The notes: generated from the sequence alone by a model not told the origin. Shown: positions 2,988 to 50,119, counted from the stretch's first letter. The stretch: 64,000 bases of DNA from Styela clava (GCF_964204865.1 NC_135256.1:5642001-5706000); one strand, 5' to 3'. Made by a program: numbers and translations.

Positions 2988-5900
2988 ATGGCAGACGATA
3001 AGACCGATGAAACGATCGATGTAATTTCCACAGCATCTTCCGGAGAAAAAGTTGAAGATAACGAAAAAGAAAATTGTGAGTCCAACAACATACCAGTAGT
3101 CTAATGTTTATTGTCAAAAAATGTCAATTCTGGTGTCTTATAAGAACAATTTCCCATTTTTTTTAAAAACGGGAAAATATACCGGCAGCGTATCCGTACC
3201 GTACTTTTCCTAAGTTTAGACTTTAGAATATTACGATACGTACATCCTACGACTGCTGATTACCTACGTAAGCTTCGAAAATTAGGGGGGGGGGGGGAGA
3301 GGGGGAGTGGTTGGCTCCAATCCAATATTCTACCAAACATGATGTTAATATAGTCTAAGTGCACGCATTTTTCTCAGTTAGAATGAACATCTACATCTTT
3401 TGGCAACATTCTCTTATTTACACTGTGTACGTTTAATTTCTTTATCTTACTCGAGGTTATGTTTCATGATTCTATAATCAGTTTGTATTTGCTTTAGTTT
3501 ATCGATTTATTTTATTGGCGTCATTGCTGATAATGGAGTTCAAATAAACCTATACACATTATTTCTAGCATCTAAAGTGAAGACTCCAATTGATCCAACA
3601 GAAAAATTGATGATTGTATTCAGCTGTTCTGTTATTCTTGTCGTCATCATTTTTGTTGTTGTTCTAGTTACGAATGGTAAGAAAGTTAACGTTTGATCAA
3701 CTTACGGTAAGTTTGTTCAGAACCGGCCACGGCACCTCTGATTACCCCACGAGGGTTCGCAGGTTCGAATCAGATGTGAGAATAGTTATGGGCGAGAGGA
3801 TTGCTGGACCTGCCGCCGTAGGGTGGTTCATGTAAACACTGGGCGGTTACGGCACTCTCCACTATCAAGTCCATGCATCTGAAAACAAATAACTAACTAA
3901 CTCCATACCCAACTTGGGCTGGTAACCAGACAAAATGCTCCGGTATGCCATATCATTAAGGCGTCTTATCGCTTTTCTCTCCCCTGGGACAAATATGTAA
4001 ATCTTATCGAACCTATCCTATCCTAACCAAGCATGAGTACTAAACCTTGTTTGGATTTAATCTGAAATGTTAAATGGAGTGAACGTCATTCTCCCTCAAA
4101 GATGGTTTGAATTTACATGAACTGCTTTGAATCTTGCGTCAAACAGTATTGACAAACGTGTGATTCTAAACTGTTATGAATTATGTGGTCCCAGTAGCTT
4201 TTGACACATGATTGTTCGCATGTTTCTTCACCTAGATATTTGCTTTTTTCTATAAAAAGTATCTCTCAGTTTAAATGTTCTCGGGTAATGTTTTGTTAGA
4301 GTATCCAGTTTGACAAGAGCCCACCAACCTACAAAGCATAAAAGGAAAAATAGCGATGCTGCTATCACATGTGTGTTAAAATGAAATTGTTCTCAATTTA
4401 TTGTTCATAATAATTAACATAGAATAGACATCAAGAAAGATTAGAAAGTGACTGCTTCCTATTTTTTGAGCTATGAGAAAGTGTTCTTTCATTTTTTGTA
4501 CTTTTTATATAACTGATTATCTTTTGCAGGAATAAAAACAGCAGCGTTGAGAAGTGTTTGTGAAGAAATTGAATCGAGAAAAAATACAGGAAAAAGTGCT
4601 GGAACGTCAGTCCAACAACCGTCTGTAGAAGATATTATGTTTTGTCAAAGTAAGCAAGTTCTAAGCTTCATCATCCAGAGTGTAATGTATCGGGTAGGCC
4701 GAACTCAGACATTTCACTAATTGAAAGATATTTCGCTGATCACAATACACTAATCATCAATAAAATTGATGATAAACAATGAAAGTTGTGAGCTTCGAAA
4801 TGAGCTTGGTCTGTGATGTAATCACTTATTAAAATTTTTATTTGGGATCTGCATGAGAAGCCGATAGGACAGCTTAATCCTATGGCGAACCACGGCCTCT
4901 TGTCCGGTTACCATTGCATCTTGGGGGCTCCCGAAGTATGCGAACCAAGATGGCGGACATCGGAATGTAATATGTGTACTAGGTAAGGGTTAGGCCATAA
5001 TTTTAGCTATAAATACTACGGGAGGCTCTTGGCTAGTCTTCGAACTGATAATAGGACAAAAATAAGAAAAATTGAAAAAAAATTATTGCCTAACCCTAAC
5101 CTGTTACCCATGTTACGTTCCGATGTCCGCCATCTTGGTTCGCATACTTCGGGAGCACCGCAGCTTGGGTATGGGATTAGATAGCCAGTTATTTATTTCA
5201 GATGCATGGACTTGATTCCGGTCCTTTCAGAAATAGGTTTTGTCACAAACAAGATTACGAAGTTTGAAGATTTATTTGACACATTTTTGTTATGGTATAA
5301 TTATGCATAAACCTGCTTATCCCTAAAACATATCACTTTTCTCTTCGATATATTTCGAGGATTCCAAGGCAAGAAAGAGTATTTCAATAAAATGTTATGT
5401 GTGTTTCAAAGTTGAAATAAATGTTGCCCTGCTGTCTTTATTATACAGATATTACAACTTCTGAACTTTTGGTGGAGTATTAATGAGCTTGGCAAGTTCA
5501 TTTAAAAAAGTGATTTTTTGGAAGTCCCTTTTGATCATTTTGAGTTGAAATTTCGACTATAAGCATTCACATAGGTCTATGTGTTTCAAAGAATTTCCAT
5601 CTTACATTATTTTTTTCAGGTATAAAGTGCAAATTTGATGTTCTGAATTGTAAAGTGCCTTGTCCTTTTGGATTCCAAGTAGATTCAGATGGTTGTGCCA
5701 CTGGTTGCCAATGCGGAGGAAGAGGAATATTGCAAGGAGATATCGCATTTGATGAAGCAGATGTTCCAGTCATGATGGATGTGAGACATCTTTTATTTTT
5801 TTATATAGAAGTTGATTCGATACAAATAATTGTTAATCATGAAGAATAAATGCACGGCTGTTTTTAGTACATTGTTTCCCTGAAAATAAGACTGGGTCCT

Positions 5901-8900
5901 ATTTTAATTCTGTATAGAAAAATGACACTAGGGCTTTTTTGGGGGGTGTCTTATAGTAAAATCATTTTTAAAATTCAGAGCAGGTCTTATTTTCAGGCTA
6001 GGTCTTATTTTCGAGGAAACACGGTAGTTTGTAGTACAGATGGAAAATCAGAGGCAGGCATAGCCAAAGCCTTTTCATATAAATTAACAAAAGAGCAATG
6101 CTCAAGGTTCTAAAATGGTACCAATACTGTCATGTAGGGGTTGCGTAGACCATAGGTTCTCAAAGTGCTCCGTACGGAGCCCCAGGGCTCCGCGAGAGAA
6201 AACCAGGGGCTCCGCGAACTATTCGATTACTTTTCAGAATACTGACTTGGCTAATTTTGTAACTGTTCAAAGAATCAATGACAGCTTTGATAAAATTTGA
6301 CAACAATATAGCCTCGAAATATGGCAAAGTGGCGGAATTAAAATGATATTATTTATAAGCAGGAGCGCAGCCAGGATTTTTAAGAGGGAGGAGATTCACC
6401 ATTGGAATCCGAAATTTCCGCGCAACATTCTTTGCGATTAAAAAAAAACGGATAACGAGATTTCTGTTGCGTAAAATATTCAATTCATGACCGATGCGAC
6501 CATTTGAAGTGTCTTGTCGCAATAATTTAATTGTGCTCATCGTTACTCACGTTCGAGACTACTATTAGGATTACTGAAATGAAAAAATACTATTGTAAAA
6601 TAACATAAACTGCGTGATAAACTGCCAACTATAAATAAATTGGAGTCTTATTTTTGCGATCTTGGGATTTGTTAAATTTGATTTGTTCTTTCGCACTCGA
6701 GATTATTTTTAAGCAAGATATCGCCGTTTGAAAAATCACAAGGTCTTGGCAAAATTTATTTTGGTGCATGCGGCTCCGTCGGTAGTTTCAGAATGGAAAA
6801 ATGATACATCGTGCGCATAATTAATTGACTGTGTTTCAATTTCGCAGTCACTACGATGAATAACCGAAGAAAACCTAACATAACACCAAATTTTGTGATT
6901 TACAATGTCTATTAAAGCGTTTTTATTCTAATGTGAGTCTGCTGAAACAAAACTTATAGTGTTATCTTTCATTTTAAGTTTTAGTTCTAATATTTTAGAA
7001 CGCCGCTTTTCAATCAAGAAATTTGAATTGCGGACCTCTTTACTAACTATTATTTTGTAGTATTTCGTCGCCGATGATTATATTATGGTAACATGTTTTT
7101 CACATTGAACTCATAATTCCCCACGAGAACGAAAAAGCATTTGTCGTCGTCATTGTGGAACAATACATGTATATGCCGAGGGAAATTTTTGATTTAGGAA
7201 GAATAAACACCGGCGTAAAGATGTTTGAGGTTTAAAAACACGCCATGCTGACGAAAACAATCGGCGATTGTAACAAAATGCAATCGCGCACGTTATTAGA
7301 GGCCTTTTAAGTCTTCCAAAAATGTCAAGAGGGGAAAAGATTAGACCCCTAATTTACAGCCTTAATATATACAATTTATCTTTGAAATTTAGATTTATTC
7401 ATGACTTGTATTAACCCTATTGAAAGGGTATAGTATTTAAATTGAGTTAAAGTTATATTAATCGGAAAGTAACAATTTTAACGTTTATTTTGGGGCTCCG
7501 TGAATGATAGTCAACCTTTCCAAAGGCTCCTCAGCACCAAAAGTTTGAGATCCCCTGGCGTAGACAGTTTTTCGAGAGGGCATGAAGCTTATTAAAAATA
7601 AATATATTTGTTGGATTTGATCTTGCCTGCCTCATTCTGCATATTTACATTTCAAATCATTCGATTTATTTCAATATCAACGTTCCATCCACGTATTTTC
7701 AACATGCTTTTGGAATGAAACATACTATCGCCTTACCATCTGTTTGTTACTTGTTGCTTAGTGAAATATCTGGTCCCATATAACTCATACGTAATTTGAA
7801 AATAAAATGAAAGTAATAGTCTTTTAGCGACTTTACTGGAATTTAGTGAGACTTTGACACTTAGTTGAATGGGACAAACATCAAACTATTCCTCAAAATC
7901 GAACCAGCTGACACTGATCTAACTAACATTCAAAAATTGAGTAACTTTAACTGAAATTTCCATATAGCCCGACAATCGACATTTCGACCAGAATAATTGA
8001 CAATTTACTCATATCTCATATTTAAATGAAATCTTATGTCATGAGTGCGCGTAACAATCTTTGATTTGCACTCAAATTTTGTACAAAAAAAAGTTTTTGT
8101 TCCTAGGAATTTGGTCTATCCAATGAGCGACAGGATTTTAATATTGAAGGACAAGATGTAGGAATTCCATTGTGGACACGAGACAAATTTGAAGGAGAGG
8201 AAAATCACCTGACTATTGCCTATAACTTGGATGCTGATTTAAGTATGTTATTTCAGTATTTGTTTTTTTGTTGAGTGTTTTCATTCAGAACAATGCTATA
8301 CATAGGCAACCAGTGATATGTATATATATATATATAAGCCTATACTATTTTTGAAGCATTCATCACACCTTATGTGAGGTGGCAGGCATGAAAATTGAAT
8401 TTGAGAACAGTAACCTGCTATGCAAACATAGTTTTTTCCAACAAGTAAACAATCGGGCAATTGCACCATTTTATTAAAATTGTTGGAGCTTGATTGAAAC
8501 TCTCAAATGACCATTTGCGCTGTTGGGACGAATGGGACTTGAGTCACATTTATTTGAAGATTTAGCTCGACCTGAGTCAAAGAAGGTCGCTTATCCCAAG
8601 TCTTTACTTCTTCCAATTGCCTTGATTGAATATCTTTTGGCATGACCTCAGGCCAGGTGAACTGATATTTCAACCTGGGCTGCTCCAATCATAATTTCAC
8701 TGGTGATTGTTTGCTAGAGAGAGAGAGAGAGAGAGATTTAATATCTTGTCATTTAAAAAGAATATAGTCATCAATGCAGTTAAAAAGATACCGCAATAGA
8801 ATGTCGATGTTACCAAAAATCTCAAACTCAACCATATTCTTGAAAGATTTAATCATTTTATGCCAAATCTAAACAACGCCAGACAAAAAGTAATTTCGCG

Positions 8901-11900
8901 TCACAACGCACAGTTTAGGAACCACTGGTTTACACATTTGATTACAAGCTTTCATTTTCCATCACAGCTGAAGAACAAATCTCTTCATGGAAACGAGCTA
9001 TTGGACAACTTGAGAAGGAAACTTGCATCAGATTTAAAGATCGGAAACATGAAGAATTGGATTATTTATTTGTAACAAAAACAGAATCCCCTGATTGCAC
9101 GTAGGTAGATTTTATTCTGGAATTCTTCTCTGTGAAGAGTACGCTTTCACTCTTTCTTCAACAAAAGGCTGTAGCTCGCCATATATTTGATTAAACTGTC
9201 TTATTAGCTTTCCTCTACAGATGCCTTGTCAGCAGTTGGCGCATTGTTCCTAATCATTAGAAATATGCTTGCCATCACACTACTGATGACCCTTCGTGAG
9301 GTTCGAATTCTACATAGGATACTTATATGCGAAAGGATTGCTGGTCTCCTCATGGCTGTAGGGGGGTTCACGTTCCCTGAAAATCCCACGCTGTTAGTTA
9401 TAAACAAGAAATCTATTTAATAATGCACCATCTCAGATGTAAAGCTTTCTGTCTCTATATTTTAACAGATCCTTCATTGGACGCAAGGGAGGTCAACAAA
9501 AGATAGTGATGGGCGATTGTTTCTCATCTCGACATGTAGAACACATGCTCATGCATGCTTTAGGATTTCAACATGAACATGCAAGACATGACAGAGAAGC
9601 TTATATTGAGATTAAATTGGATAATGTAATGGCAGGTTGGTGCTGATTATAATTGTGGATGTCGTTGTCTGGTGTTCAAACCAGGGGTGGGCAAGGTATT
9701 TAAACCAGGTGCCAAAAATGTTGCCGACCCAGACTGGCGGGCCATGAAAGTCTGACATAAAAAAGTTACATTTCATGAACAATATTTTCAGGGTTACAAA
9801 AGCAAGAGTAGAAAACAATAAGCCTTGTGCCAAAAGTAAATTTATTCGCAATTTAAACAAATTCCTTGAGCTATTTTTTTGCTAATGCATCAAAATTTGA
9901 TTTTAGTTTGGCTGTGGCGGGCCAGATTGAATTACCAAACGAGCCAATTTGCCCCGTGTGCCGTAGTTTGACCCTGTCAGGGTTAAATAATAAGATTTAT
10001 TCTTAAGACTTCAACTCAAGTTTAAACTCCCGAGTTTAAATCCCATGCCACCTCACCAAGGGTGTAATAAATTCGCAATGCCAAAACGAGAAGATTGTGG
10101 TTTTTACAAACTAAACTACAATAAAACTTAAATGGCATTGGCTACCGTACTTGTTTCGAAGTGAGAGGCATATAAATACATAGTATAGAATCAATTTTAA
10201 GAAAATATGAATGCTAACAATATTGGGGCCAAGTGATAATATCAGTTCAGGCAGTGGCACAAGCTTGGACAAAGCCTGATTATTGTAATTGACCGTCTGA
10301 CTGTTTGTCATTGTTACAATTCGGTTACTTCCTCGAACATTTAAAGCATTGAAGCAGAGAAAAACAAATAATCCACAATAATATTGAATACATTCTACAA
10401 TAATATTTTGAATATGGAATATTGATAATATTCTAAATTGTGTCATTTCAACTAACAAAAGTTAAACCATATTCAACAAGTTAAACTTTGAAAATGCAGA
10501 AATGAATGTGAGAGTTACAGCATAGCCTATAGCAGTGGTTCCTAACCGAGAGCAGTTGGAGGGGGCCATTATGCCATGCGCAAAACTGCCGTGGGTGTTT
10601 TCATTTTGTTGAGCATGAATTGTTTGAACATAATGGGATTTGAAATCTACCAATCAAATTAACAATATAAATATTTCTGGAATGATAAATAAGGGGGCCA
10701 TGAGTGCTAAAAGCAAGTCTACTATTTCAGAACACAAGGACAAGTTCAATGCAGTTTCTAAAGATCGTACAGAACCATACACAACAGATTTTGACAAAGA
10801 TAGTGTCACGATGTTCAGTGGATATGCCTACTCAATAGCAGAAGACAAACCAACGATTATTGATCTCGAAACATCACAACCTCTAGTTGTTTCAGATCAC
10901 GGCTTGTTCTCTGAGAACGATGTGTTGGATATCAATGGTCTCTACTGCAAAGGAATCGATCCTGAATCTGCTGGTAAATAAGAATTTTTTATAATAATTT
11001 AGAAAGAAGGAATATACATGTTGTGACAGTTATTTATTATTACCAAAATTAATGGCTTTGAGAAACTAAAAACACATCTTAGCCTAAACACAAGAACATG
11101 CAACATAATTACAGTCACTCAGTATAGCCAAACTCAAATGGACCACCGTCTAATACTCATAACAGCAGTGATACGGATGCAATCCATTGTCGCTTGACAA
11201 TAATCAGTGAATTAATTCTCATAACAATATATTATGATAATTATGATAAATACACTAAACCAGCGGTTCCCAAACTATGGGTCGCGACCCACTGGTGAGT
11301 CGCAAGAGGAATTTCAGTGGGTCGTGAAAAGATGTAGAAAGCTTTGATCAATTATACTGGTGATTAGGATCGGTGGCAAAGCAAATTTAAAAGCTAATTT
11401 CGAAATAAACTGCAACTTTTCAATTTTTTACGTCTAAAACTATCTGAAATTGAAATAAATGTCAAGTCTATTATGGAAAATAGCAAGAAACAATCTCATC
11501 TTTCTCACTAGCTTCACTGAAAATTCAATTTGAGAAATTAAATTTGTTTCCTCCATCAATGTTTTACTAATTTATTAAAGTTAAATGGGTCGCCATAAGC
11601 TGTGGTAAAAAATAGTGGGTACCAACTCTAAAAAGTTTGGGAACCACTGCACTAAACCAATAACTACTCGGTAAGTAAGTCCAGAAAGATAACTGTAATC
11701 ACAATAAAGGAATAAAATTAGAAGAGCTAATTACTTTCAATGATTCAAATTCAAGATTCAATTTCATATTTTTCTGACTCATATCTTTTGATTCCTTCTC
11801 ATTCATGGCTTCAAGTTCATTTTCAAGTTCTTTATTATTATAATATCTAAATATTGTAATTGTAACTGAGACAGAAATTGGAGTTACAGGTGCAAAGTTT

Positions 11901-14900
11901 CAATTCAAAGTTTAATGTGGCGATTGTTTATATGCGGAATCAAAGCATACTCATTGTGCATATTTGGCCCAGCAGTACATAATGTTTACCTGTTGATCAC
12001 TTGTGTAAACTATTATTTTGTATTTACATAAAGTTTTTCATTCTGTATTAATTATTCAGAAATGGAAATTGTGGAACAAGAGACTGTGTTGGGAAACAAT
12101 ACAGACGAAATTATGGAAACAATGGTCAGGTCTGCTCATCAAGTTCAGGGTAAGCATAGGATAGCAAGTGTATTCCTATTTCTCAGCACAATGCGGCATA
12201 CTGCCGACTTCTGATCCTTCTTAGTAGAGTGATGTCTGGTAGAGATAAAATTCAGTAAGATGGCCAAATCATATTGCTGTCCCAGGTCTTTTGTCTAATT
12301 ACAAGTCCAGGTCAGCAATAGTTACCCAATTGTGCATTCATTGTATACAGATACTTGAAGCAGTATATTCTTTTCTGCGTTTCTCAATATTATTTGCATA
12401 AAGTAGAAAGAAGTTCTTTGGGCCCGCGTACAATGCAGCTTATTGTAGCAACACAACTTGTAGCTAATTTACAACATTTCATTTATGCTTTTTGCCTTGA
12501 ACAAGGCCAAAGTATCCAGTGATATCTGACAAGCTACTGTTTTTGGCCGAAAAACCGAAATTGCCTACCCAAAATATTACACCTTTGGTGAAGTGGTGGT
12601 GAGCATGGACTTTGAACCCACGATATATACTCTGCGATGCAAACAAAGTTTAGTCTAACGCTTTAACCACTTCAGCCACATACTAGTCCTCTAACCATTC
12701 TATTTTATCATTGTCCGTTCCAGCATTCTGGACAAATTGGGCGAGTTGGGGGAAATGTGACCACACCTGTGGACCGAGAGCAATTATGAGTCGATATCGT
12801 AAATGTAAAACAGAGAAAGGACATACAGTAGCAGGGATGTGCCGAGGTGGGAGTGTGATGACTCTTCCATGTAAAGATATTCCTTGTCCGATGAGAAGTT
12901 CTTTGAAGCCGAGATGGTCAAAGTGGTCAGATTGGTCTGAGTGTTCTGAAACGTGTGGCGGTGGAGCAACATTCAGGTGAACAAATTTGTCATTTTGCGC
13001 TATTACATTTTGTGGCGCTCCCGAAGTATGTGCACCAAGATGACGCACAACCTGAACCCCAACCTGGTACACATACTATGTTCAGGTTGTGCACCATCTT
13101 GGTGCTTATACTTCCGGAGCACCCATTTTGTACACATTGAACTTTTAGTTATTTTGTGAGAATAAGATTGGCGATCTGTTACACTGCTTGTTTTGATGGA
13201 CTCTAAATGGAACTCATGTTTGTGCATCTGAAACAAATAAATCGTAAACTATTTCTATACCCGACATTTCTAGTAACCAAATGAGATGCCGTGGTTTGCC
13301 ATACGCTTAAGTCGTTTAATCGGTTTTGCTAAATTGCTATTAATGTTAGGGTGAACAATAATGAGTGAACTGCGGATTTGAATATAAGTTAGATTTATTA
13401 CAAGGTTGCTATTATGATTGGTATAAAACATTAGGGAAATTGTTAAAGTAATCTTTGAATGGTGAATTCATGGTAAAATTGGTGGTTTGAACATTGGGGA
13501 TTCTTATGAAGGGCACCAACCCTTCCTGTGTTTTTAAGTTTCTAGTTTCTGTATTGTAATATGACCAACTTTGCATTTTTCTCAGATCTCGAGAATGTAG
13601 CAGAGGGAAATGCAGAGGAGATCATTATCAATATGAAATGTGCAATACAATGGAGTGTAGATCAAGTAGGTTTGCTTATCAAGGGGTGATTAGTTTTGCA
13701 CAGGGCAATGGAGAACAAAAAGTCTTTACCAAAGTCTAAATCAGTGGTACTCAAACGGTGGGGCGTGCCCCACAAGGGGGGGCGTAGACAATTTTTTAGG
13801 GGGCATGAAGCTAATTAAAAATAAAAATATTTGATTTGATCTTGCGCGCCTTATTTTGGATATTTACTTTTCTTCATTGTTCAGAAATTGCAATTCTATC
13901 CACAGATTTTCAACGTGTTTTTTGAACAAAACATACTTTCGCCTTACTATCTGTTATTTGTATCTTATTGTTAGCTAAATATTTTTGAGGTGGGGTGTGG
14001 GACATGGCAAATTTTAAAAGGGGGCGCGACCCAAGGAGTTTGAGAACCACCGGTCTAAATTATATTGATAGTACTACGGAATTTGAATGCAGCATCATTT
14101 TTTCATTAGCCATCTTCACTCCAAACAAGGCCATGTATAAGCAGCCAATGATGAGTAAGGTATCTTGTATACCTGTGTCAAAAAGGGACAGGCTCAGGAA
14201 TAAAAGTGGATGAAGTGAAATTGATTTAAAATCTTATGTTTTATTTCTTCTGTAATGGACCAAGATTTTTTTCAGTGCTCCAGAAGTGTGTGTACCAATA
14301 TGAGGGGAAATTAGTTTTGTTCGCCTACATCAAGTTGTGTAAAACTGTAAAGGGACTGAAACCTATGGGCAGGGGGTATATTCACTTGGCTAACACAGTC
14401 AGGCCCTGAACTCGCAATAGAATTAAAATAAGGAAAATCAGAGTAAAATTATGGCCCAACCTTAACCTGGTACATACACTACAGGAGTACAGTTTTTTTA
14501 GCAGAATAGAAAAAGAACGGCTTTTACTTTGACTCAATTAGCACTTCTTATTTGGCTATGGGATGCTATGCAAGACATCTTGATAACGTAGATATATCAA
14601 CATGCTGTTGTTAGTTGAGGCTTCCACTAGATTGTATTTCTCCCATAAAGCTATACCGTACATACCTGTACCTTAGGATGAGTGGAAATATAAATTATTC
14701 ATTCTGAAGTACTTTTCAAACGTCAGGCGAATTCAATAGATTTGATCCATGGAGTGATTGGAGTCAATGTTCAGTTGAATGTGGTGGTGGACTGAGATCT
14801 AGATTCAGAGAATGCAAAACAATTTCAAGAAAGAGATCTAGAGAATGTGGAGGAATCGTGGACGATGATGGAATACAGTCAGTCTAGAAAGTATTTTTAA

Positions 14901-17900
14901 CATGAACTATCTGATTTCAATATCAGTATTAGATTTTATTTTAAATAAAGTGCAGAATAGTGTAGTGAATCGAGTTGAGTGCTCGCTCCACTTGGCTGCT
15001 GGGAGTCTGGCATATTGAAACTCACTAACACGAAAGCAGTTGAGGGTTTTGAATTTTGAATCGATTTCTAGAGACAATATTGTTGTAAGTGGAAAGTCTA
15101 GGATAAGCTTGACATTGCTTGTTATGTCATTACAAAAGTTGATGTATGTTAGTATATGAACAAGAACAACGTATGCGCAGAAAGTTCAGGAAGGAACATT
15201 AAACCCAATCATATTACAGTGATAACTCAATAGTCGAGCGACTCGATACTCGAACAATTCGGTCGTCGACCGAAAAATTCTGGTGAAAAATGATGTGGTA
15301 CACGAATTCGGTGATCAAACACCCTAGCGCCGCCAATGTGAGATGACGTCTTTGCAAAACAAAAAAGGAATCCCATAGAGCCCTCAGTAATTCGCTTGAA
15401 CATTCAGTACTTATGCAAAAAAAAAAATTATAAATTCATCTCTATTATGTACGCATTTAAATAATTATTTTTTGTTTTGGTACATATTTATTTAATATTT
15501 TGGGTATTTTGGAATAAATTAAAATAATTACCATTGTTTCTCAAGGCAAAAAGGGTTTTGTTACTGAAACAAATCAGTAGTCGAACACCAATCCTGAACG
15601 GATTATGTCTGAGTACCGAGGTATCACGGTATTAACCTAATGATACATACGTGTCCATTATTAACATAAATATGGAAATAACTTTTTCATTCTTATTTAT
15701 TTTTAATATCAACTCTCCCTTAAATAGGATATCATTTCCATGAAAATGAATTGGCTTTTAAACTATCTTTCTTTTTGTTTATCGATGACCATCGTGCCAT
15801 GCATTTCACTTTTTCAGGTATCAATCTGAGGTTTGCTCTGATGTTCAATGTCCTTATGGTGAGTGTTGTTAATACTAATCCTCTCATCCAGTTACTAGTC
15901 CATGCAGGGTATGGGATTAGTTAACCAGTTATTCATTTCAGATGTAGGCTATGGCTTGACTTTTACAAATTGCAACTCCTGCATATCCTTCCAGTGTTGT
16001 CTATCGTTTGAAATTAGAAATATAAGGTGGACCTATTTCTATCTAAGATGGGGACAAAATGACTGGTTAGTAATTTTGCTTTATCATATTATAAGGTGCA
16101 ATCCCTGACAAATGGTTTGATAACTCAGCTATATCGAAGGCAATGGAAGAACCTGCTTGGTTTTTGAGATCAGAAAACCAGGTTAGTTATATTGAAACTC
16201 ATCAAATTCAACTCCTGATAATTTAAAAGCACTTATATGTTCTGACTGATCCTGGATTATGACCGTGGCAAATGTTGAATGCGAAGGGTAAAACCAGATA
16301 AGCATTTCGATTGTTAGATTCTGTAAGGTCATCAAAACTTGAGAATCAATGTAACTTTTTTTTAAACATGTTCGATTATTAGAATTGTTTTTGACATAAC
16401 AGCATTTTTATCATCTATTTACTTATTCTGCTATCCTTGAAAATTTTGTAAAATTTGAAGTTAAATTGTTCTATCATCAGATTGAAGTTAATATTCCTAT
16501 AATTGATGTATTATGTATCACATCAGAGGTTCTCAAACGTTTGGGCGGCTATGGAGCCCATGAAAACGTTGACTATTATTTACGAAGCCCCGCAAAATAT
16601 CTAAAAAAAAAAAGATTAATGTTCTTTAGTAAATTAAAATTACTTTATTTAATGACTCCGATGTATTTATTGCTTTTTTGGACAGTTACAAAATTAGCCA
16701 AGTCAGAATTTTAATAAGTAAACGGATAGCTCTCATAACCCCTAGGTTTCTCTCAAGAAGCCCTGGGGCTCCATATAGAGCATTTTGAGAACCTATTTAT
16801 TACATTATTTTGTCTAAAATATGGTCATATATTACGTGTAACGGCCTCAGTTGGACCGCACCATGTTCATTTTACTACAAACGACAAATATTTGTTTCAG
16901 CTTCCAGTATCAGTCTGTGAACCAGGATTGAAAACTCAGTGGTTGTTTGGAGATTTTAATGGAGATCGAAGGAGTGACATCTTGTGTAGGAATGAAGAAG
17001 GAGATGTGTAAGTATTTTGTTGATGTTTTCTTGGCGATATGGTGTATCATGCTAAGCCTTAGAGGAATAAGCTCGCCACAGCACCTCTGATTACTCTGCG
17101 AGGATTGCAGGTTTGAATCCCATTTAGTTATGTGCGAGAGTATTGCTGAACTCCTTGCCTCTGCAGGGTGGTTCACGTAACCACTGGTCGATTGCGGCTA
17201 CTTCCACCATCCTGTCCATGCTTCCGAAAACAAATAACTGACTGACTTATTCCATATCCGACATGGACGATAGATTGTGGTTCGCCATATGATTAAGCAG
17301 TCTTATCGGCTTCCCTCGCCCCGAGATGAATATGTGAATCGGGACAGTAGAGTCAAAGACAAGTTTCATCCAATTCCGACTTCAAGCCATTCAAAAAATG
17401 AGTCCCAGATAAGTGTTATCAAGAATTTTTTCTTCAACCCGGGTTCAGTTAAATCAATTCCGACACAAGCTCTAGTCAAACCTTCCTTCCTAGTGTCTAT
17501 TGAAATTTCAAAGTGAGCTTCTATTCAACTACATAAAGCATTCAGGCCCACAATATCTATTCGATAATTATGGAAATCAAAGTTGATTGTGGAAATGGAA
17601 CTGCTTAAAAAAAATTCATTTGCGGCATAAAATATTCAGATTGTAAGCAATGCCTCACGTCTCTGACATTCTGCAATCTAAGTCTAATCTTCGCTTTCGT
17701 TGAAGGTTTAAAAACGTTATTTTTCTAGAGATAGGAAGACCCTGCGAAGTTCCGGGACTGTATGTGTGAGCCAATAGAATATACCCCCTCACCTGTCCAT
17801 AGGCTTCAGTCCCTTTACACAACTTGATGTAAAGTAGGCGAACAAAATTAGTTATATCCATATTGGTAAACATACTTCTGGAGTGCCAATAAAATTATTC

Positions 17901-18697
17901 ATAGAGTCTTGTAGATAGAGATGCAGTCTTGTACTTTCAACATATTTAGAATCATGTTGTTCAACCAAACTGTAATAATATTGATAACTAATCATTGTTA
18001 TTTCAGAAAGATAGTACTAGCCGGCCGAGGCAACAGACTTGATAAAATATCTTGGGAAGGGAAGTTACATAATTGCATTTTAAAAAGTTTACACACTGGA
18101 GATTTTGATGGAGATGGAACAACTGATGTCCTATGTGTTGCAGTAGATGGTGTCGAAACGTAAGTGGTGTCTTGGATTAAAGATGAAATTCCATTTATTC
18201 ATTGTGAAATGTTGACCACAGTCCCACGCCTGGTTATTGATCCTGTGGTGGTAGAGAATAGGTCAGTGGCTCCCAACCTTTAGGCTAGGAGAGGATTTAC
18301 ATATTTAGGTTGTGAAACACTGAAATAGATCACAACCCATTTTATACTGGAAGCAGGACGAGATATAATTATGATCACACCTTATTTTGTGTCCTTATGT
18401 GTTAAGTTTTTTAAATTCTCCCAACACACAAATGAATGATAATTTTGGAAGAATTGAAAAAGAACATTATTTATGTCTCTCAAATAAAAAACTTTTTTCA
18501 GAGACATGATACTCTTCCCAATTCGACGTGGAGAACCCAAAGATCCGGTGATGATCGGCAATCTTTGTGTTGATAGTAATTGGAAAGTTTACGTCGTTGA
18601 TGCAAACGGAGATGGAAAAGATGATATTTTATGTCGAGATGAAACAGTCGAACCAAAGAAATTTTCAAAGATTCATTTAAATATTTACGAAATCTAA
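2988..18697 (+). CDS. Type II membrane astacin-like (M12A) pseudo-metalloprotease with antistasin-like, 3x TSP1 and 3x FG-GAP/VCBS-like repeats; 17 exons, 770 aa
   Basis: Exons: 2988-3075, 3569-3676 (TM, LMIVFSCSVILVVIIFVVVLV), 4530-4649, 5620-5780 (CKVPCPFGFQVDSDGCATGCQC and QGDI), 8107-8242, 8968-9100 (ETCIRF), 9469-9635 (HMLMHALGFQHEHARHDREAY), 10731-10973 (DSVTMF...INGLYC), 12060-12149, 12724-12976, 13586-13665, 14727-14877, 15818-15858 (TSP1 WxxWxxWxxCxxxCGGG), 16096-16181, 16901-17007, 18007-18159, 18502-18697 (GDFNGD/GDFDGDG/DANGDG). All introns are GT-AG with compatible phases. The total of 2313 nt is an uninterrupted ORF ending in TAA. Confidence 0.9.
3721..4026 (+). mobile_element. 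tRNA-derived SINE, 5'-truncated diverged copy
   Basis: Box B-like GGTTCGAATC, a body similar to the 18953-19293 copy, and an (ATCCT)n-type tail. Confidence 0.75.
4924..5159. mobile_element. Merlin-like palindromic MITE (subfamily A), inserted into a SINE
   Basis: Near-perfect TIRs of about 50 bp (GGgGCTCCCGAAGTATGCGAACCAAGATGGCGGACATCGGAA). TSD GCATCTTG/GCAGCTTG (8 bp, 1 mismatch). Both flanks are contiguous SINE sequence. Confidence 0.85.
5870..6024. mobile_element. Tc1/pogo-like MITE
   Basis: Imperfect inverted termini TA-CAtTGTTTCCcTGAAAATAAGAC ... GTCTTATTTTCGAGGAAACACGG-TA. Confidence 0.6.
6151..7557. mobile_element. Non-autonomous hAT-like element nested in another hAT MITE
   Basis: Termini CATAGGTTCTCAAA...TTTGAGATCCCCTG. 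Perfect 8-bp TSD GCGTAGAC (6143-6150 and 7558-7565). The flanks match the interior of the 13742-14052 family. Confidence 0.8.
11261..11649. mobile_element. hAT-like MITE
   Basis: TIR CAGCGGTTCCCAAACT/AGTTTGGGAACCACTG; perfect 8-bp TSD CACTAAAC. Confidence 0.85.
13014..13123. mobile_element. Short (110 bp) palindromic Merlin-like MITE
   Basis: Termini GGCGCTCCCGAAGTAT...ATACTTCCGGAGCACC; perfect 8-bp TSD CATTTTGT. Confidence 0.85.
13742..14052. mobile_element. hAT-like MITE
   Basis: TIR CAGTGGTACTCAAAC/GTTTGAGAACCACCG; perfect 8-bp TSD GTCTAAAT. Related fragments lie at ~7560-7770 and ~63565-63680. Confidence 0.85.
14274..14491. mobile_element. Merlin-like MITE, subfamily B
   Basis: Aligns by eye with 36117-36330 (CATCAAGTTGTGTAAA..GGGACTGAAACCTATGGGCAGGGGTATATTCACTTGGCTAACAC). 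Confidence 0.7.
17033..17339 (+). mobile_element. tRNA-derived SINE, diverged copy
   Basis: Same head (GCACCTCTGATTACTCTGCG..GGTTTGAATCCC) and body as the 18953-19293 copy. Confidence 0.75.
17745..17887. mobile_element. Partial Merlin-like MITE subfamily B, reverse orientation
   Basis: Reverse complement of the 36117 element's first ~140 bp, ending ...ACATACTTCTGGAGTGCC. Confidence 0.65.
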
Positions 18698-18952
18698 TTC
18701 GAGTTTTTTAACGTTTTGCTTTTATTTTTCGATGCTGGTATTGAATGTAGATGAATATAATATATACGCAAACAGGTAAAAAATATGTAAGACGTTTGTT
18801 TCTATAAATGAGCACCATTCTGATATTCGTCCAGAGGACAGGAAAGCTAACAAGGCGGCTTAGGGTTTACATATTTAATCCGGGCAGGGGGAAAGCCGTT
18901 AAGACAACTTAATCATATGGTTAACCACGATGTCAGGTCCGGTTACCAGTCC

Positions 18953-46880: not shown

Positions 46881-48317
46881 TTACAAGTTTGTATTTAACT
46901 TCAAGTCCACATTGAGTACATTCGTAAAACATAGAACTCTAATGATATTTGTGCCACATTGTTTCTTTGGTACGCACACTCTCTTATGTGTGTATAGTGA
47001 TTTGCTATGCCCGTACTCTTTCCCGCATGTTTTACATTTATAATTTTTTTCCTGATTGTGAATTGCAATAATGTGAGCTTTCAAGCAGTTGATATATCCA
47101 AATCTCTTCTCGCAAATATCACATTTATATTTCTTTTCACCTAGAACACAATAAAAATACAGCAAGGTAATTCATGTGTCCGTATTATACAAAATAAATC
47201 TTAGCAATACTTGTGGTATGTGAGGATTTAAAATGTTTTAAAGAAATATCTCCAATTTTTCAATTAAGATGGGAGCATGCTTCATTATACTCTCGAAGTA
47301 TGTGAACCAAGATGGCGGACACCCTAACGTAGTAAGTGTACCAAGTTAGGTTTAAGCCATAATTTTATTCCAATTTTCTTATATCAGTTGTTTTACGAGT
47401 TCGGGGACTAGCCAAGTGACTTCCGTATTATTTGTATCTGAAAATTTTGCCTAAACTGGTACACATACTACGTTCCGGTGTCCGCCATCTTGGTTCATTT
47501 ACTTCGGGAGTATCTGATTTGTAAATATGATAAATACAAAACTTGAAAATTTACCTGTGTGTGTTATCATGTGTGATTTTAGATGAGCAAGTTTCCGGAA
47601 TGACTTATTGCATATTTTACATATGCACGGTCTTTCGTTGTTATGAACTCTCATGTGAAGTGTCAAAGACTGATTCCGTTTAAACGATTTCAAGCATACT
47701 TTGCATTGGAATGGTTTTTCATCCGAATGCATTACCATATGGTTATCAACATGAATCTTTTTCCAAAATGCCTTTTCACATATTGGGCATTTATATGACT
47801 TCTCATTATCTGACAAATGGATATTCGTATGACTCGTCAAACCTGACTTTCTTCTAAATGATTTGCCGCAAATATCGCAGTGATGATTTTTTTCCTGAGT
47901 GTGAGTTTTTTTATGTTTAGTCAGGCCTGTTTGGAATCTGAATGATTTTCCACATTCAGTGCAATTGTATTTCTTCTCCTGTACAATATGAATCTTCAAA
48001 TGCTTTTTCATAAATGCATTTTCGCTGAAAATTCTATCACAAACGGGGCATCGATATTCCACTCCAAAGTGTGTCTTCGAATGGTCCTTGAGTCTACATT
48101 CAGTGGTGAACGATTTACCACAGACTTCACACATATAAGGTTTGTCATCATGTGTCAACATATGTTTATGCAATCTTATCTTAAAACGAAAATATTCTCC
48201 ACAAAAACTACACTGTTTCCTTTTTTCATTTAGATGTTGTTCACCTTCACATTGTAACTTTGCCTGCTTAGAAGATAGCATTATTAAACTATTGCCAACA
48301 TCTTCTGCAACAAACAT
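46881..48317 (-). CDS. C2H2 zinc-finger protein copy 1; exons 48317-47555 and 47140-46881, 340 aa, 9 C2H2 + 1 C2HC fingers
   Basis: Eight CxxC..HxxxH fingers lie in exon 1. A phase-1 intron splits the HTG|EKKY linker (G|GTAAAT...TTCTAG|GT). No effector domain is visible. Confidence 0.9.
47288..47514. mobile_element. Merlin-like MITE subfamily A in the ZF intron (also ~50532-50759, and ~53778-53983 with a 23-bp TIR deletion)
   Basis: TIRs CGAAGTATGTGAACCAAGATGGCGGACACC / GGTGTCCGCCATCTTGGTTCATTTACTTCG. Confidence 0.8.
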
Positions 48318-50119
48318 ACATTCAGAGTCAAAGCAACTTTAAAGTCTTGGAAAGAAATGTAGCCTGACTAATTGGGGTGAGGGCTGATTTATAAACTACC
48401 CAGGATGTGAACACACTGTATACCTAACGAAGAATCTAAAACATGATGAGGGCCTAGTGTGGCTGGACTACGTTTTCGCTAACATAAGAAAGAAAATTCA
48501 TTGCATTGCATAAATCTTTCGCAGTTCCAATCATCGAATACGAAAGCAATTTTCGAATTAATTATTACAAACTATTACAATTTTATTGCGTCAAGAAGCG
48601 GAAATTTAGCAGCCAATAGGCAGTGGTGAGATTCAAAATGTTAAGGACAGGTTCCCTCATTTCATAAAACCATGAACTTATAGGGAAAGATTAGTAATTT
48701 GAACGAACATTTTTAAATACATAGAAAAAGGCTGATTATTAGTATTGGAGAAATTCTCCTTCTCTGTAGTATTATCCAGTCTTGTAAATACAACCTTAAC
48801 GTGTATACTGTTCAATAAACTAAAAAAGAATTGTCGTTTGTCCGCTATCATCTATTGTCTGCTGGGGGCGAGCGCCTACATAACTGAACATCGAAGTGAA
48901 GAATAATTTGTGCAAGTTAAAAGACAAGAGCCCGTGATCCTTTAAAAGACCTACGAAAGATCTCGTACGCCGGCTCAATTTATATTTAGGACACCTATTC
49001 TGAAAACTAAAACAAGAAAGAGATCTCGGTTTATCACGACTTTCCAATAACCAGTTCGCGCGGATCCTTGAGTACCCCCTGAATCCCAACACTGCGTTTT
49101 ATCTACTTCTGTCACTCTCAGTCAAAGGTTCAAGCGCACATACACACCTTTTAGAAAAACCCAAGCAATGCTTCAAGGGAAACATTCACAGCCGAATCGA
49201 GACTAAGGTAATTGTTTCAATAGGAAATGTCAACATAATTTTGTTCAAAATACAATTTCCCGTACAAGTGACGCCACGTATTTGTAACATTGAAATATTC
49301 CAAGAACGGATTCGCGCTAATCCCAACACTGCAACTCTGTTTGAGAGCAAAAGACACAAAGTTACTCGGCGCTCCAGAAGTATGTATATCAATATGAAAG
49401 TAACCATTTTTTGTAACGGAACCGGCTAAAAATATGACATTTGTCTGATGAAACCGGCTGACGAAAAAATTTGAATCCCACTACTGGGTATATTCACTTG
49501 GCCAACACAGACAGTCCCCGAACTCGTTATCGAACCAACATAAGGAAAATCGTGATAAAATTATGGCCTAACCCTAACCTGGTACACATAGCACGGGAGT
49601 ACCAGTTACTCAATATATAATCAAATAAAAAGGGTTTTCTGCTAATCTTACAAACTTTTCATGATTGAAATTTTAATATAGAACTAGAGAAGTGGTTGCA
49701 AACCTTTTTTTAAATTGTCCCGTTATCACAAAAAACATTTTTTTTTATAACCGTCTTTGAGTGCACTATCAATACTTTTTAACGAGTGCCGTATTTCCCG
49801 GCGATCAGCCTTTTTCCCATATTTAGTTGAGAGATCTGAACCTCGTTATAAACAATTTTACACACATGTATAAAAAAAAAATGCCGTACTCTCAAATAAT
49901 TTTCAGTGTAATACATTGCCATAATTATTTTAACATATTGAACAATCATAAAATCTGGTAATCAAATGAAATAAAATAATTTGTTAAGAATTTCAAACAG
50001 TATCCAGTGTATTAAACTCCCATATTTGTTATTCTTTAATTTTAACATAATAAGCAGTTTAAGATTATCATAAATCTAGCAATAAAAATAAAATAATTTA
50101 TTAAGAATTTTAGACTGGA

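What the first reader, a model, noticed from the sequence alone, without database searches (positions are those of the whole stretch)
2988..18697. Unusual mosaic receptor-like protein: type II TM + antistasin-like module + dead astacin + 3 TSP1 + 3 FG-GAP-like repeats
Seen: a clean 17-exon, 770-aa ORF with this domain order; most of it is invisible in the ORF track. The module CKVPCPFGFQVDSDGCATGCQC sits immediately before the astacin propeptide motif (QGDI, equivalent to the F-x-G-D-I aspartate switch). Known: antistasin-type repeats are serine-protease-inhibitor folds. From memory, type II astacin+TSP1 proteins (Tast) were described on ascidian sperm as egg-coat proteases. Inference: this could be a non-catalytic adhesion, decoy or inhibitor counterpart of such proteases at the cell surface, for example in gamete recognition or immunity. 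I do not know of a described protein with this full combination.
Basis: partly seen in the sequence, partly recalled or inferred. Interest (0 to 1): 0.78.

Follow-up and report, generated by a model that had tools for sequence, protein, structure and literature searches.

The report
Dead-enzyme Tast astacin of sea squirt
This is a real, spliced sea-squirt gene for a membrane-anchored member of the 'Tast' astacin protease family that has lost its catalytic residue, so it probably binds rather than cuts; its domain mix is the family norm, not a one-off.

Summary
Seventeen GT-AG exons (2988-18697, + strand) translate exactly to a 770-aa RefSeq protein, 'uncharacterized protein LOC120328125 [Styela clava]'. 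Spliced contigs support all 7 introns in the 6 kb I could lay.

Pfam confirms the parts: an Antistasin-like module, Astacin, 3 TSP1 and FG-GAP-like repeats, after one N-terminal membrane helix.

The catalytic Glu is lost (HMLMH). The loss is conserved in a 62%-identical orthologue (HMLMH) and in the tandem neighbour (HILMH). The astacin domain is among the best-conserved parts, at 75% identity.

The architecture is not unique:
- 15 of 34 astacin loci in this genome carry the antistasin-like module.
- 9 of 11 loci fetched at length also carry the FG-GAP-like tail.
- 31 of 34 loci keep HExxH.

The gene matches the published ascidian Tast family: type II membrane anchor, astacin domain and TSP1 repeats, on sperm (PMC6353882, PMC11673157). 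Those papers' main texts mention neither extra module.

Verdict: a catalytically dead variant of a known family. An earlier follow-up in this scan (s1-813321) reached the same family reading on other DNA of this genome.

The parts
2988..3075 (+). Exon 1: start codon and acidic cytoplasmic N-terminus (residues 1-29)
   Evidence: Read. It is part of the 17-exon set that translates exactly to P0001.
3569..3676 (+). Exon 2: the single transmembrane helix (residues about 43-63), acting as a type II signal-anchor
   Evidence: Highest Kyte-Doolittle 19-residue window 3.46 at residue 45; no other hydrophobic segment. Splice sites read.
4530..4649 (+). Exon 3: juxtamembrane stalk with two Cys (residues 66-105)
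   Evidence: The only AG..GT pair in 4500-4760 that makes the model identical to P0001. 62% identical in orthologue P0006.
5620..5780 (+). Exon 4: six-Cys antistasin-like module, followed directly by the pro-region Asp motif (QGDI)
   Evidence: Pfam Antistasin at 34.4 bits on the exon. The profile of 10 paralogous modules hits hirustasin at E 1.9e-4. The six Cys, one Gly and the Asp are invariant in 10 of 10 paralogues.
8107..8242 (+). Exon 5: rest of the pro-region and start of the astacin domain
   Evidence: Pfam Astacin on P0001 starts at residue 194.
8968..9100 (+). Exon 6: astacin N-terminal subdomain (the TCIRF Cys)
   Evidence: Pfam Astacin on the piece 8919-9101, E 1.1e-4. Splice sites read.
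9469..9635 (+). Exon 7: zinc-site helix HMLMHALGFQHEH. The three His are kept; the catalytic Glu is replaced by Met (codon 9545-9547).
   Evidence: Read. Pfam Astacin E 7.5e-16. Motif position. The same HMLMH is in P0006.
10731..10973 (+). Exon 8: astacin C-terminal subdomain with an altered Met-turn (SVTMF where astacins have SIMHY)
   Evidence: Pfam Astacin E 1.5e-6. Aligned to 3vtg. A phmmer search of this exon found P0001.
12060..12149 (+). Exon 9: 90-nt poorly conserved linker. Its length is a multiple of three, so skipping it would keep the frame.
   Evidence: 13% identity to P0006. Not covered by the laid stretch.
12724..12976 (+). Exon 10: TSP1 repeat 1 and the start of repeat 2
   Evidence: Pfam TSP_1 E 1.1e-10, two stretches. 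Spliced contigs X2 record 9 and X6 record 19.
13586..13665 (+). Exon 11: rest of TSP1 repeat 2
   Evidence: Joined to exons 10 and 12 in X6 record 19.
14727..14877 (+). Exon 12: TSP1 repeat 3, first part. It is absent from one low-depth contig (X2 record 9).
   Evidence: Pfam TSP_1 E 1.2e-8. Joint 14877>15818 in X1 and X6.
15818..15858 (+). Exon 13: end of TSP1 repeat 3
   Evidence: Joints on both sides.
16096..16181 (+). Exon 14: conserved spacer before the propeller blades
   Evidence: 76% identical in P0006. Joints in 3 of 4 runs (upstream side) and 4 of 4 runs (downstream side).
16901..17007 (+). Exon 15: FG-GAP-like blade 1 with Ca-loop motif DFNGDRRSD
   Evidence: Regex map. Pfam FG-GAP_3 on P0001. 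Joint 17007>18007 in 4 of 4 runs.
18007..18159 (+). Exon 16: FG-GAP-like blade 2 with DFDGDGTTD
   Evidence: Joint 18159>18502 in 4 of 4 runs.
18502..18697 (+). Exon 17: FG-GAP-like blade 3 with DANGDGKDD, and the stop codon at 18695-18697
   Evidence: Model residues 618-770 align to three blades of the Psathyrella lectin propeller 2bwm: Z 13.4, rmsd 2.4, 139 residues.

Best explanation
LOC120328125 of the ascidian Styela clava is a member of the tunicate Tast family: type II membrane-anchored astacins with TSP1 repeats. Its protease domain can no longer hydrolyse peptide bonds.

Shown:
- One N-terminal signal-anchor places the rest of the protein outside the cell.
- The pro-region carries a six-Cys antistasin-like knot directly before the conserved Asp that, in astacin zymogens, caps the zinc.
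- The astacin fold, its four disulfide Cys and its three zinc-binding His are kept.
- The general-base Glu is Met, and the Met-turn Tyr is Phe.
- Three TSP1 repeats follow, then three integrin/lectin-type propeller blades, each with a Ca-loop motif.

Inferred: the protein works as a non-catalytic surface binder or partner.
- The pseudo-active cleft, TSP1 repeats and Ca-binding blades would hold extracellular ligands, most plausibly egg-coat or matrix glycoproteins, without cutting them.
- Alternatively, or in addition, the protein pairs with active Tasts and modulates them, much as catalytically dead ADAMs act on mammalian sperm.
- Because the membrane anchor lies N-terminal to the pro-region, activation cleavage would release an active Tast. 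A dead, uncleaved copy would stay tethered.
For: Identity and expression:
- The 17 exons translate exactly to XP_039250464.
- Spliced contigs support 7 of 7 laid introns.

Domains:
- Pfam hits.
- The PDB sequence search gives astacin-family enzymes (3vtg at E 4.4e-22) and TSP1 proteins.
- The C-terminal 150 residues align to three blades of an FG-GAP-type propeller: 2bwm at Z 13.4, with several integrin alpha chains at Z 7.2-8.4.

The dead site is conserved, not decaying:
- HMLMH in this gene and in the 62%-identical orthologue P0006; HILMH in the tandem neighbour at G000:C8:5611420.
- On a 56-column tree of the zinc exon, these three form a clade, with support 83/82 (93/93 for gene plus orthologue).
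- The astacin domain is 75% identical between orthologues, against 13% for the exon-9 linker and 62% overall.
- All four astacin Cys are invariant in the 6-sequence alignment.

Family context:
- 34 astacin zinc-exon matches in the genome. 31 have HExxH; 3 do not (this gene, its neighbour, and one HQIMH locus on C5).
- 15 of 16 antistasin-like exon matches lie 0.9-3.9 kb upstream of an astacin exon match on the same strand.
- Of 11 loci fetched at length, 11 have TSP1 motifs and 9 have FG-GAP-like motifs downstream.

Literature:
- Tasts are type II membrane proteins with an astacin domain and TSP1 repeats. They are on Ciona sperm, and are transcribed in testis and ovary in Halocynthia (PMC6353882 passages; PMC11673157 sections 13 and 25 and passages; PMC9265791 passages).
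- Dead M12 ADAMs that keep their His residues (ADAM7 HQLGH, ADAM29 HHLGH) and act in sperm maturation are reviewed in PMC11266112 (passages).
Against: - No tissue or cell location is known for this gene. The runs are coded, and depth from contigs cannot be used.
- Loss of activity is inferred from established astacin chemistry, not measured.
- I could not place the gene in a tree with published CiTast or HrTast sequences. They are in closed supplements, and the word searches returned none of them. Tast membership therefore rests on architecture and taxon.
- The full-length AlphaFold model is poor (mean pLDDT 45.6; pro-region and most of the astacin C-terminal half below 50). It says nothing about whether the Asp still caps the zinc.
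- The clade that implies a single loss of Glu rests on 56 columns and moderate support.
- Introns 1-9 have no RNA evidence from this species in my hands.
Confidence: 0.62

Rival explanations
1. The protein is mainly a membrane-tethered serine-protease inhibitor. The antistasin-like module would present a canonical binding loop to trypsin-like proteases, and the dead astacin would be only a scaffold.
For: - The module profile matches only antistasin-type leech inhibitors among its better PDB sequence hits: 5 of the 6 sequences at E<=10, led by hirustasin at E 1.9e-4.
- The only 3 Foldseek matches at E<=10 are hirustasin and guamerin.
- In the alignment, the residue after the second Cys sits where those inhibitors have R, M or K. 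Here it is Lys (C-K-V-P-C), like bdellastasin's C-K-V-K-C.
- That this position is the inhibitors' P1 residue is recalled, not from a call.
Against: - The position is not conserved. It is Met in the orthologue, and A, A, D, S, E, F, Q, D and P in nine paralogues.
- Only the C-terminal six-Cys half of the ten-Cys inhibitor domain is present.
- The module belongs to the pro-region of 13 loci with an intact HExxH. It looks like a family-wide pro-domain element rather than a function specific to this gene.
- The Foldseek matches are not significant (E 4.3-6.5).
Confidence: 0.1
2. The gene is a decaying duplicate with no function of its own. Loss of the Glu would be the first step towards a pseudogene.
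For: - It lies in a tandem pair within a large, duplicating family.
- One low-depth contig skips exon 12, which shifts the frame into a stop in exon 14.
Against: - The 17-exon frame is intact, with canonical splice sites.
- Spliced transcripts occur in 4 of 4 runs, from 3 studies.
- The same HMLMH is kept in an orthologue at 62% identity, and the astacin domain is among the best-conserved parts, at 75%.
- The neighbour, also without the Glu, has kept the whole architecture, including a membrane-helix exon.
Confidence: 0.06
3. The 770-aa model is an annotation fusion of two neighbouring genes: an astacin gene and a TSP1/FG-GAP gene.
For: - Introns 1-9 were not checked with reads from this species.
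- Another RefSeq model in the family (P0005, isoform X1) does seem to run on into an EF-hand gene.
Against: - Contigs join exons 10-11-12 (X6), 12-13-14 (X1) and 13 through 17 (X2).
- X3 record 12 carries 312 further letters upstream of exon 10.
- P0006 (867 aa, one 2754-nt contig) and P0026 (1138 aa, one 3794-nt contig) each encode the whole order from membrane helix to third blade.
- The same order recurs at 9 of 11 loci.
Confidence: 0.02
4. The domain is still an active peptidase, using another residue or a bound water without the Glu.
For: The three zinc-binding His, the Glu after the third His, and both disulfides are kept.
Against: - In astacins and other metzincins, the HExxH Glu is the general base. 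This is established knowledge, and the same criterion is used in PMC11266112 Table 2.
- The Met-turn Tyr is also lost.
- 31 of 34 astacin loci in this genome keep the Glu, so its loss is not neutral noise in this genome.
Confidence: 0.03

Closest known systems
Tast proteins of ascidians (CiTast1, 2a-d of Ciona; HrTast1-5 of Halocynthia)
   Same: Tunicate origin. No signal peptide, and one N-terminal transmembrane helix (type II). An astacin-like domain followed by 2-6 TSP1 repeats. Genes lie in tandem clusters. Similar size: HrTast1 is 866 aa, HrTast3b 778 aa and HrTast3c 813 aa, against 770 aa here (PMC11673157 Table 2, read).
   Different: - The published consensus HEXXHXXGXXHE is not met; this gene has HMLMH.
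- The main texts of PMC6353882 and PMC11673157 have 0 occurrences of 'antistasin' and 'FG-GAP'. So the pro-region knot and the three-blade tail are either absent from those proteins or unreported. Their sequences are in supplements I could not open.
- No orthology was shown here. Peptides translated from the 8 printed HrTast primers occur in none of the stored proteins, which at that point included P0001, P0004-P0006, P0012 and P0016.
Catalytically dead ADAMs of the sperm surface (ADAM2, ADAM7, ADAM29 and others; MEROPS family M12B)
   Same: Membrane-anchored metzincin-fold proteins that lack the HExxH Glu. Some keep all their His residues (ADAM7 HQLGH, ADAM29 HHLGH). They act through adhesion domains rather than proteolysis (PMC11266112, passages and Tables 1-2).
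   Different: - A different subfamily: adamalysin, not astacin.
- Type I rather than type II topology.
- Disintegrin, Cys-rich and EGF modules instead of TSP1 repeats and propeller blades.
- The review's Tables 1 and 2, as far as I saw them, list only ADAM-type proteins under M12.
Antistasin-type leech inhibitors (hirustasin, guamerin, bdellastasin)
   Same: The six Cys and the G-[FY]-x-x-D-x-x-G-C core of the module align to residues 22-52 of hirustasin (E 1.9e-4). Pfam Antistasin scores above its cut-off.
   Different: - Only the C-terminal half of the ten-Cys domain is present.
- It sits inside a protease pro-region.
- The position of the inhibitors' reactive residue varies freely among paralogues.
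Integrin-alpha / Psathyrella velutina lectin type (FG-GAP) beta-propellers
   Same: Repeat sequence with D-x-N-G-D-G-x-x-D Ca-loop motifs. Pfam FG-GAP_3 at E 1.5e-11. Structural match to three blades of 2bwm (Z 13.4) and to integrin alpha chains (Z 7.2-8.4).
   Different: Only three blades instead of seven, each bracketed by a Cys pair (positions 625/648, 678/698, 728/750). How, or whether, a ring is closed is unknown.

Membership tests
Tast (tunicate astacin with TSP1 repeats) | Encoded by a tunicate | tested here: met
   The source's name for P0001 is 'uncharacterized protein LOC120328125 [Styela clava]'.
Tast (tunicate astacin with TSP1 repeats) | Astacin-like metalloprotease domain followed by two or more TSP1 repeats | tested here: met
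   Pfam Astacin E 3.1e-39 (residues 194-378), then TSP_1 with 3 stretches.
Tast (tunicate astacin with TSP1 repeats) | Single N-terminal transmembrane helix without a signal peptide (type II) | tested here: met
   One hydrophobic segment at about residues 43-63 (hydropathy 3.46) after a 41-residue polar N-terminus. All the disulfide-rich domains lie C-terminal to it. DeepTMHMM and SignalP, which the papers used, were not available.
Tast (tunicate astacin with TSP1 repeats) | Zinc-site consensus HEXXHXXGXXHE | tested here: not met
   HMLMHALGFQHE: the three His and the final Glu are present, but the first Glu is Met.
Tast (tunicate astacin with TSP1 repeats) | Groups with CiTast/HrTast in a phylogeny | not tested
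   The published sequences are in closed supplements or ANISEED, and the word searches did not return them.
Tast (tunicate astacin with TSP1 repeats) | Present on the sperm surface, or transcribed in the gonad | not testable with these tools
   The runs are coded and kept as contigs. Spliced transcripts exist in 4 of 4 runs, but their tissues are unknown.
Astacin peptidases (MEROPS M12A), active enzyme | General-base Glu in HExxH | tested here: not met
   Met at that position (window 9545-9547). It is also Met in orthologue P0006, and Ile in the tandem paralogue.
Astacin peptidases (MEROPS M12A), active enzyme | Met-turn SxMHY with the zinc-ligand Tyr | tested here: not met
   SVTMF aligns to SIMHY of 3vtg.
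Astacin peptidases (MEROPS M12A), active enzyme | Astacin fold with its two conserved disulfides | tested here: met
   - C224, C248, C266 and C377 are invariant in alignment A1.
- Sequence hits to 17 or more astacin-family PDB sequences.
- The model's residues 193-378 align to astacin 6saz at Z 10.0, though this part of the model is of low to moderate confidence.
Antistasin-type inhibitor domain | Match to the family profile above its threshold | tested here: met
   PF02822 scores 34.4 bits against a cut-off of 21.2 on the exon. 8 of 10 paralogous modules match at E<=0.01.
Antistasin-type inhibitor domain | Complete ten-Cys, two-subdomain unit | tested here: not met
   Six invariant Cys align to hirustasin residues 22-52 only.
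Antistasin-type inhibitor domain | Conserved reactive-site residue and inhibitory activity | tested here: inconclusive
   The position holds K here, M in the orthologue, and nine paralogue residues (A, A, D, S, E, F, Q, D, P). Activity is not testable here.
FG-GAP / integrin-alpha-type beta-propeller | FG-GAP repeat profile and Ca-loop motif | tested here: met
   FG-GAP_3 at E 1.5e-11. There are three D-x-[ND]-G-D-x-x-x-D loops.
FG-GAP / integrin-alpha-type beta-propeller | Seven blades closing a ring | tested here: not met
   Three repeats only, here and typically in the paralogues. The structural alignment covers about three of the blades of 2bwm.

The most novel reading that the evidence does not exclude
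The three-blade tail is a half-propeller that can only close by pairing with the tail of a second family member. On this reading, the Glu-less pair on contig C8 are dedicated non-catalytic partners of active Tasts: they tether, aim or restrain them at the egg coat, as an ascidian counterpart of the fertilin-type dead ADAM heterodimers. In this gene, the antistasin-like loop with Lys at the inhibitors' reactive position would in addition restrain trypsin-like sperm proteases.
Probability: 0.12. Interest if true: 0.7.

Novelty: new variant of a known kind. Interest (0 to 1): 0.42.

Why it matters
Tast proteases are the leading candidates for the enzyme that lets ascidian sperm pass the egg coat, but their activation, substrates and partners are unknown.

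A conserved, expressed family member that keeps the zinc site, the pro-region latch and all binding modules, but cannot cut, is a natural substrate-trap or regulator. Such a protein could be used to fish for Tast ligands.

This would also be a conserved pseudopeptidase in the astacin branch of M12. In the 2024 pseudopeptidase review, the parts of Tables 1-2 that I saw list only ADAM-type proteins under M12.

The family-wide antistasin-like pro-region knot and three-blade Ca-binding tail are absent from the main texts of the Tast papers I could read. Both bear on how a type II anchored zymogen is kept latent, and on what it binds.

Tried and rejected
My first hand model had 15 exons (707 aa). 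It missed exon 3 and exon 9, and used a weaker acceptor for exon 12. Comparison with P0001 corrected it.

I first mis-indexed the donor of exon 9 by one base and thought the exon was out of frame. Recounting gave 90 nt, in frame.

An in-frame alternative acceptor at 8919 was considered and not adopted. P0001 and P0006 both use the exon-5 route.

Two of the five phmmer hits, P0002 and P0003, are unrelated proteins (TIG/VWA and RTX types) and were dropped.

The idea that P0006 (867 aa) is HrTast1 (866 aa) was tested with the paper's primers. No translated primer is found in any stored protein, so it remains unidentified.

The word-based protein searches were too insensitive to survey the family: 17, 4 and 7 hits. 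The survey was made on the genome itself instead.

The full-length AlphaFold model was too poor (mean pLDDT 45.6) to use for the pro-region or the active site. Only the C-terminal blades and part of the astacin domain were used.

Foldseek on the 53-residue module gave no significant match.

There is no paralogue elsewhere in the window.

Paper searches:
- 'antistasin' with 'astacin': 11 papers. I read one of them (PMC9382459), where the two words refer to different proteins; the other ten I saw only as a listing.
- 'Styela clava' with 'astacin': 2 unrelated papers.
- 'astacin' with 'pseudoprotease': 2 papers.
- Tast + astacin + Ciona + FG-GAP: no paper holds all four terms.

Full report
What is there.

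- Antistasin: piece 5544-5846, E 2.2e-7.
- Astacin, in three pieces: 8919-9101 (E 1.1e-4), 9443-9643 (E 7.5e-16) and 10634-10978 (E 1.5e-6).
- TSP_1: pieces 12687-12977 and 14708-14884.
- Weak FG-GAP hits: pieces 16739-17008, 17915-18160 and 18488-18694.

In one search, 6 of 10 pieces had a hit. In one search, 4 of 10 did, and one of those was a spurious phage family.

I searched the model exon by exon and did not submit a joined model.

A phmmer search with exon 8 alone, against 1.84 billion representatives, found 5 proteins at E<=0.001. The best, P0001, is 770 aa and 100% identical over the exon. It is XP_039250464, 'uncharacterized protein LOC120328125 [Styela clava]'. A script showed that 17 GT-AG exons of the window translate exactly to it.

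RNA support.

Nine runs hold 8-14% of the sampled words of 8900-18700, which is about the exonic share. Four further runs hold 87-91% and are DNA-like.

I laid four of the low-share runs, from three studies, on 12700-18699. They gave GT..AG joints at every annotated intron in the stretch:
- Intron 10: X2, X6.
- Intron 11: X6, plus a loose end in X1.
- Intron 12: X1, X6.
- Intron 13: X1, X2, X6.
- Introns 14, 15 and 16: 4 of 4 runs.

One 990-nt contig (X2 record 9) runs from exon 10 to the stop but leaves out exon 12. Read off the three-frame display, that shifts the frame into a stop in exon 14.

They rest on three things:
- The identity to the RefSeq model.
- An 867-aa orthologue (P0006, 62% identity, 98% coverage) encoded on a single 2754-nt contig of an unnamed organism.
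- Contigs that continue upstream of exon 10.

The parts.

Membrane anchor. Residues about 43-63 are the only hydrophobic segment. Everything after them is disulfide-rich, so a type II topology follows.

Antistasin-like module. It has six Cys and is followed at once by A-x-x-G-x-x-x-x-D-[IV].
- In 10 paralogous copies, the six Cys, the Gly and the Asp are invariant.
- 8 of the 10 copies match Pfam Antistasin.
- Their profile hits hirustasin (E 1.9e-4), guamerin, bdellastasin and gigastasin in the PDB sequences. It aligns to the C-terminal half of those inhibitors.
- A 53-residue model (mean pLDDT 69) found only hirustasin and guamerin by Foldseek, and not significantly.

Astacin domain. It keeps three His, the Glu after the third His, and four Cys. 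It has Met for the general-base Glu, and SVTMF where hatching enzyme 3vtg has SIMHY.

C-terminal tail. The last 150 residues carry three D-x-N-G-D-G-x-x-D loops, each between two Cys. They are the better part of an otherwise poor full-length model (mean pLDDT 45.6; about 65-81 over residues 630-750). They align to three blades of the Psathyrella velutina lectin propeller (Z 13.4, rmsd 2.4, 139 residues) and to integrin alpha chains.

Family context.

The architecture is not a one-off.

The genome has 34 matches to the zinc exon and 16 to the antistasin-like exon. Of those 16, 15 lie 0.9-3.9 kb upstream of a zinc-exon match on the same strand.

I fetched 11 such loci at length. All 11 have TSP1 motifs downstream, and 9 have FG-GAP-like motifs, usually three. 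The other two may simply run beyond the DNA I fetched.

One of the 11 is a tandem neighbour 35-42 kb upstream (G000:C8, about 5607-5619 kb). It has the same order of parts, including a membrane-helix exon.

A second Styela gene, LOC120343233 (P0005), and its orthologue P0026 have the same layout with HEIMH and more TSP1 repeats.

What sets this gene apart.

The zinc motif is HExxH at 31 of the 34 loci. The three exceptions are this gene (HMLMH), its tandem neighbour (HILMH) and one locus on C5 (HQIMH). Among the 15 loci with the antistasin-like module, 13 keep the Glu.

On a 56-column tree of the zinc exon, this gene, P0006 and the neighbour form a clade (support 83/82, and 93/93 for gene plus orthologue). 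This suggests one loss of the Glu before the tandem duplication, and before the split from the species of P0006. The alignment is short and the support only moderate.

Between the orthologues, identity varies by part:
- Astacin domain: 75%.
- TSP1 repeats: 70%, 50% and 69%.
- Tail: 60%.
- Exon-9 linker: 13%.

The dead domain is therefore under constraint.

Comparison with what is known.

Tast proteins were named in Ciona as sperm-surface astacins with two or three TSP1 repeats (PMC6353882, passages).
- They were later recognised as type II membrane proteins.
- Ten were listed in Halocynthia. Four of these have a membrane helix and are transcribed in testis and ovary (PMC11673157, sections 13 and 25 and passages; PMC9265791, passages).

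This gene meets the architectural features, but not the zinc-site consensus.

Neither 'antistasin' nor 'FG-GAP' occurs in the main texts of the two primary papers. No paper in the library holds Tast, astacin, Ciona and FG-GAP together. The Tast sequences are in supplements that were closed, so those proteins may well carry the modules unreported.

The 2024 review of metallopeptidase pseudoenzymes mentions astacins once, in passing. The parts of its Tables 1-2 that I saw list only ADAM-type proteins under M12.

An earlier follow-up in this scan (s1-813321) reached the same family reading for another cluster of this genome.

How it most likely works.

Shown: a membrane-tethered ectodomain with a zinc-site scaffold that lacks the general base, a conserved pro-region Asp, three TSP1 repeats and three Ca-loop blades. 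The gene is spliced, expressed, and conserved as a Glu-less lineage.

Inferred: it binds rather than cuts. The ligands would be extracellular, plausibly egg-coat or matrix glycoproteins, since Tasts are sperm-surface proteins and TSP1 repeats and lectin-type blades are binding modules. It may also pair with active Tasts. The anchor lies N-terminal to the pro-region, so removing the pro-region would shed an active Tast, while an uncleaved dead copy would stay on the membrane.

I give the identity claim (a dead member of the Tast-type family) about 0.85. I give the binder or partner mechanism about 0.5, and a specifically gamete-related role about 0.3.

Limits.
- No tissue information.
- No activity data.
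- No tree with published Tasts.
- A poor model for the pro-region and the active site.

Noticed in passing
window 14727-14877 (exon 12): One 990-nt contig of run X2 joins exon 11 directly to exon 13. Runs X2 and X3 have zero depth over exon 12, while X1 and X6 include it. Skipping the 151-nt exon shifts the frame into a stop in exon 14. The product would end after the second TSP1 repeat.
   Followed up: partly
window 8919-8967: The 49 bases upstream of exon 6 are open in the exon's frame and preceded by AG. They read as an astacin-like 'PLVYTFDY' stretch. Used as an acceptor after exon 4, this would stay in frame while skipping exon 5. It may be an alternative or ancestral splice site. It lies outside the stretch I could lay.
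   Followed up: no
G000:C8:5607079-5619500 (L001, L003), 35-42 kb upstream of the gene: A tandem paralogue with the same order of parts: membrane-helix exon, antistasin-like module, astacin, three TSP1 motifs and three FG-GAP-like motifs. Its zinc motif is HILMH, so it too lacks the catalytic Glu. Its Met-turn reads SIMTL.
   Followed up: partly
G000:C5:7319914-7320087 (L048): A third astacin locus without the catalytic Glu (HQIMH). It also has HK where the others have HE after the third His. It is not next to an antistasin-like exon match.
   Followed up: no
G000:C3:10344776-10357800 (L020, L021): RefSeq isoform X1 of LOC120343233 (P0005, 1245 aa) ends in EF-hand domains. Its orthologue P0026 lacks them and ends in a third FG-GAP-like repeat. 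A third such repeat motif does exist in the genome at C3:10357792. The RefSeq model may therefore run on into a neighbouring gene.
   Followed up: partly
window 12900-13099, 13900-14099, 14300-14499, 17700-17899: Intronic bins with summed contig word depth in the thousands to tens of thousands in all four runs, with many partial and inverted joints. They look like copies of abundant, transcribed interspersed repeats.
   Followed up: no
window 47499-54786, minus strand: Three near-identical C2H2 zinc-finger open reading frames of 272, 260 and 272 aa, spaced about 3.2 kb apart.
   Followed up: partly
P0004 (Clavelina lepadiformis, 468 aa): Another ascidian has a secreted astacin that also carries an Antistasin-family module before the Asp motif. 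It has an intact HELMH, a Ser/Thr-rich stretch and a ShK domain. The pro-region knot is therefore not confined to the TSP1-bearing members or to Styela.
   Followed up: partly
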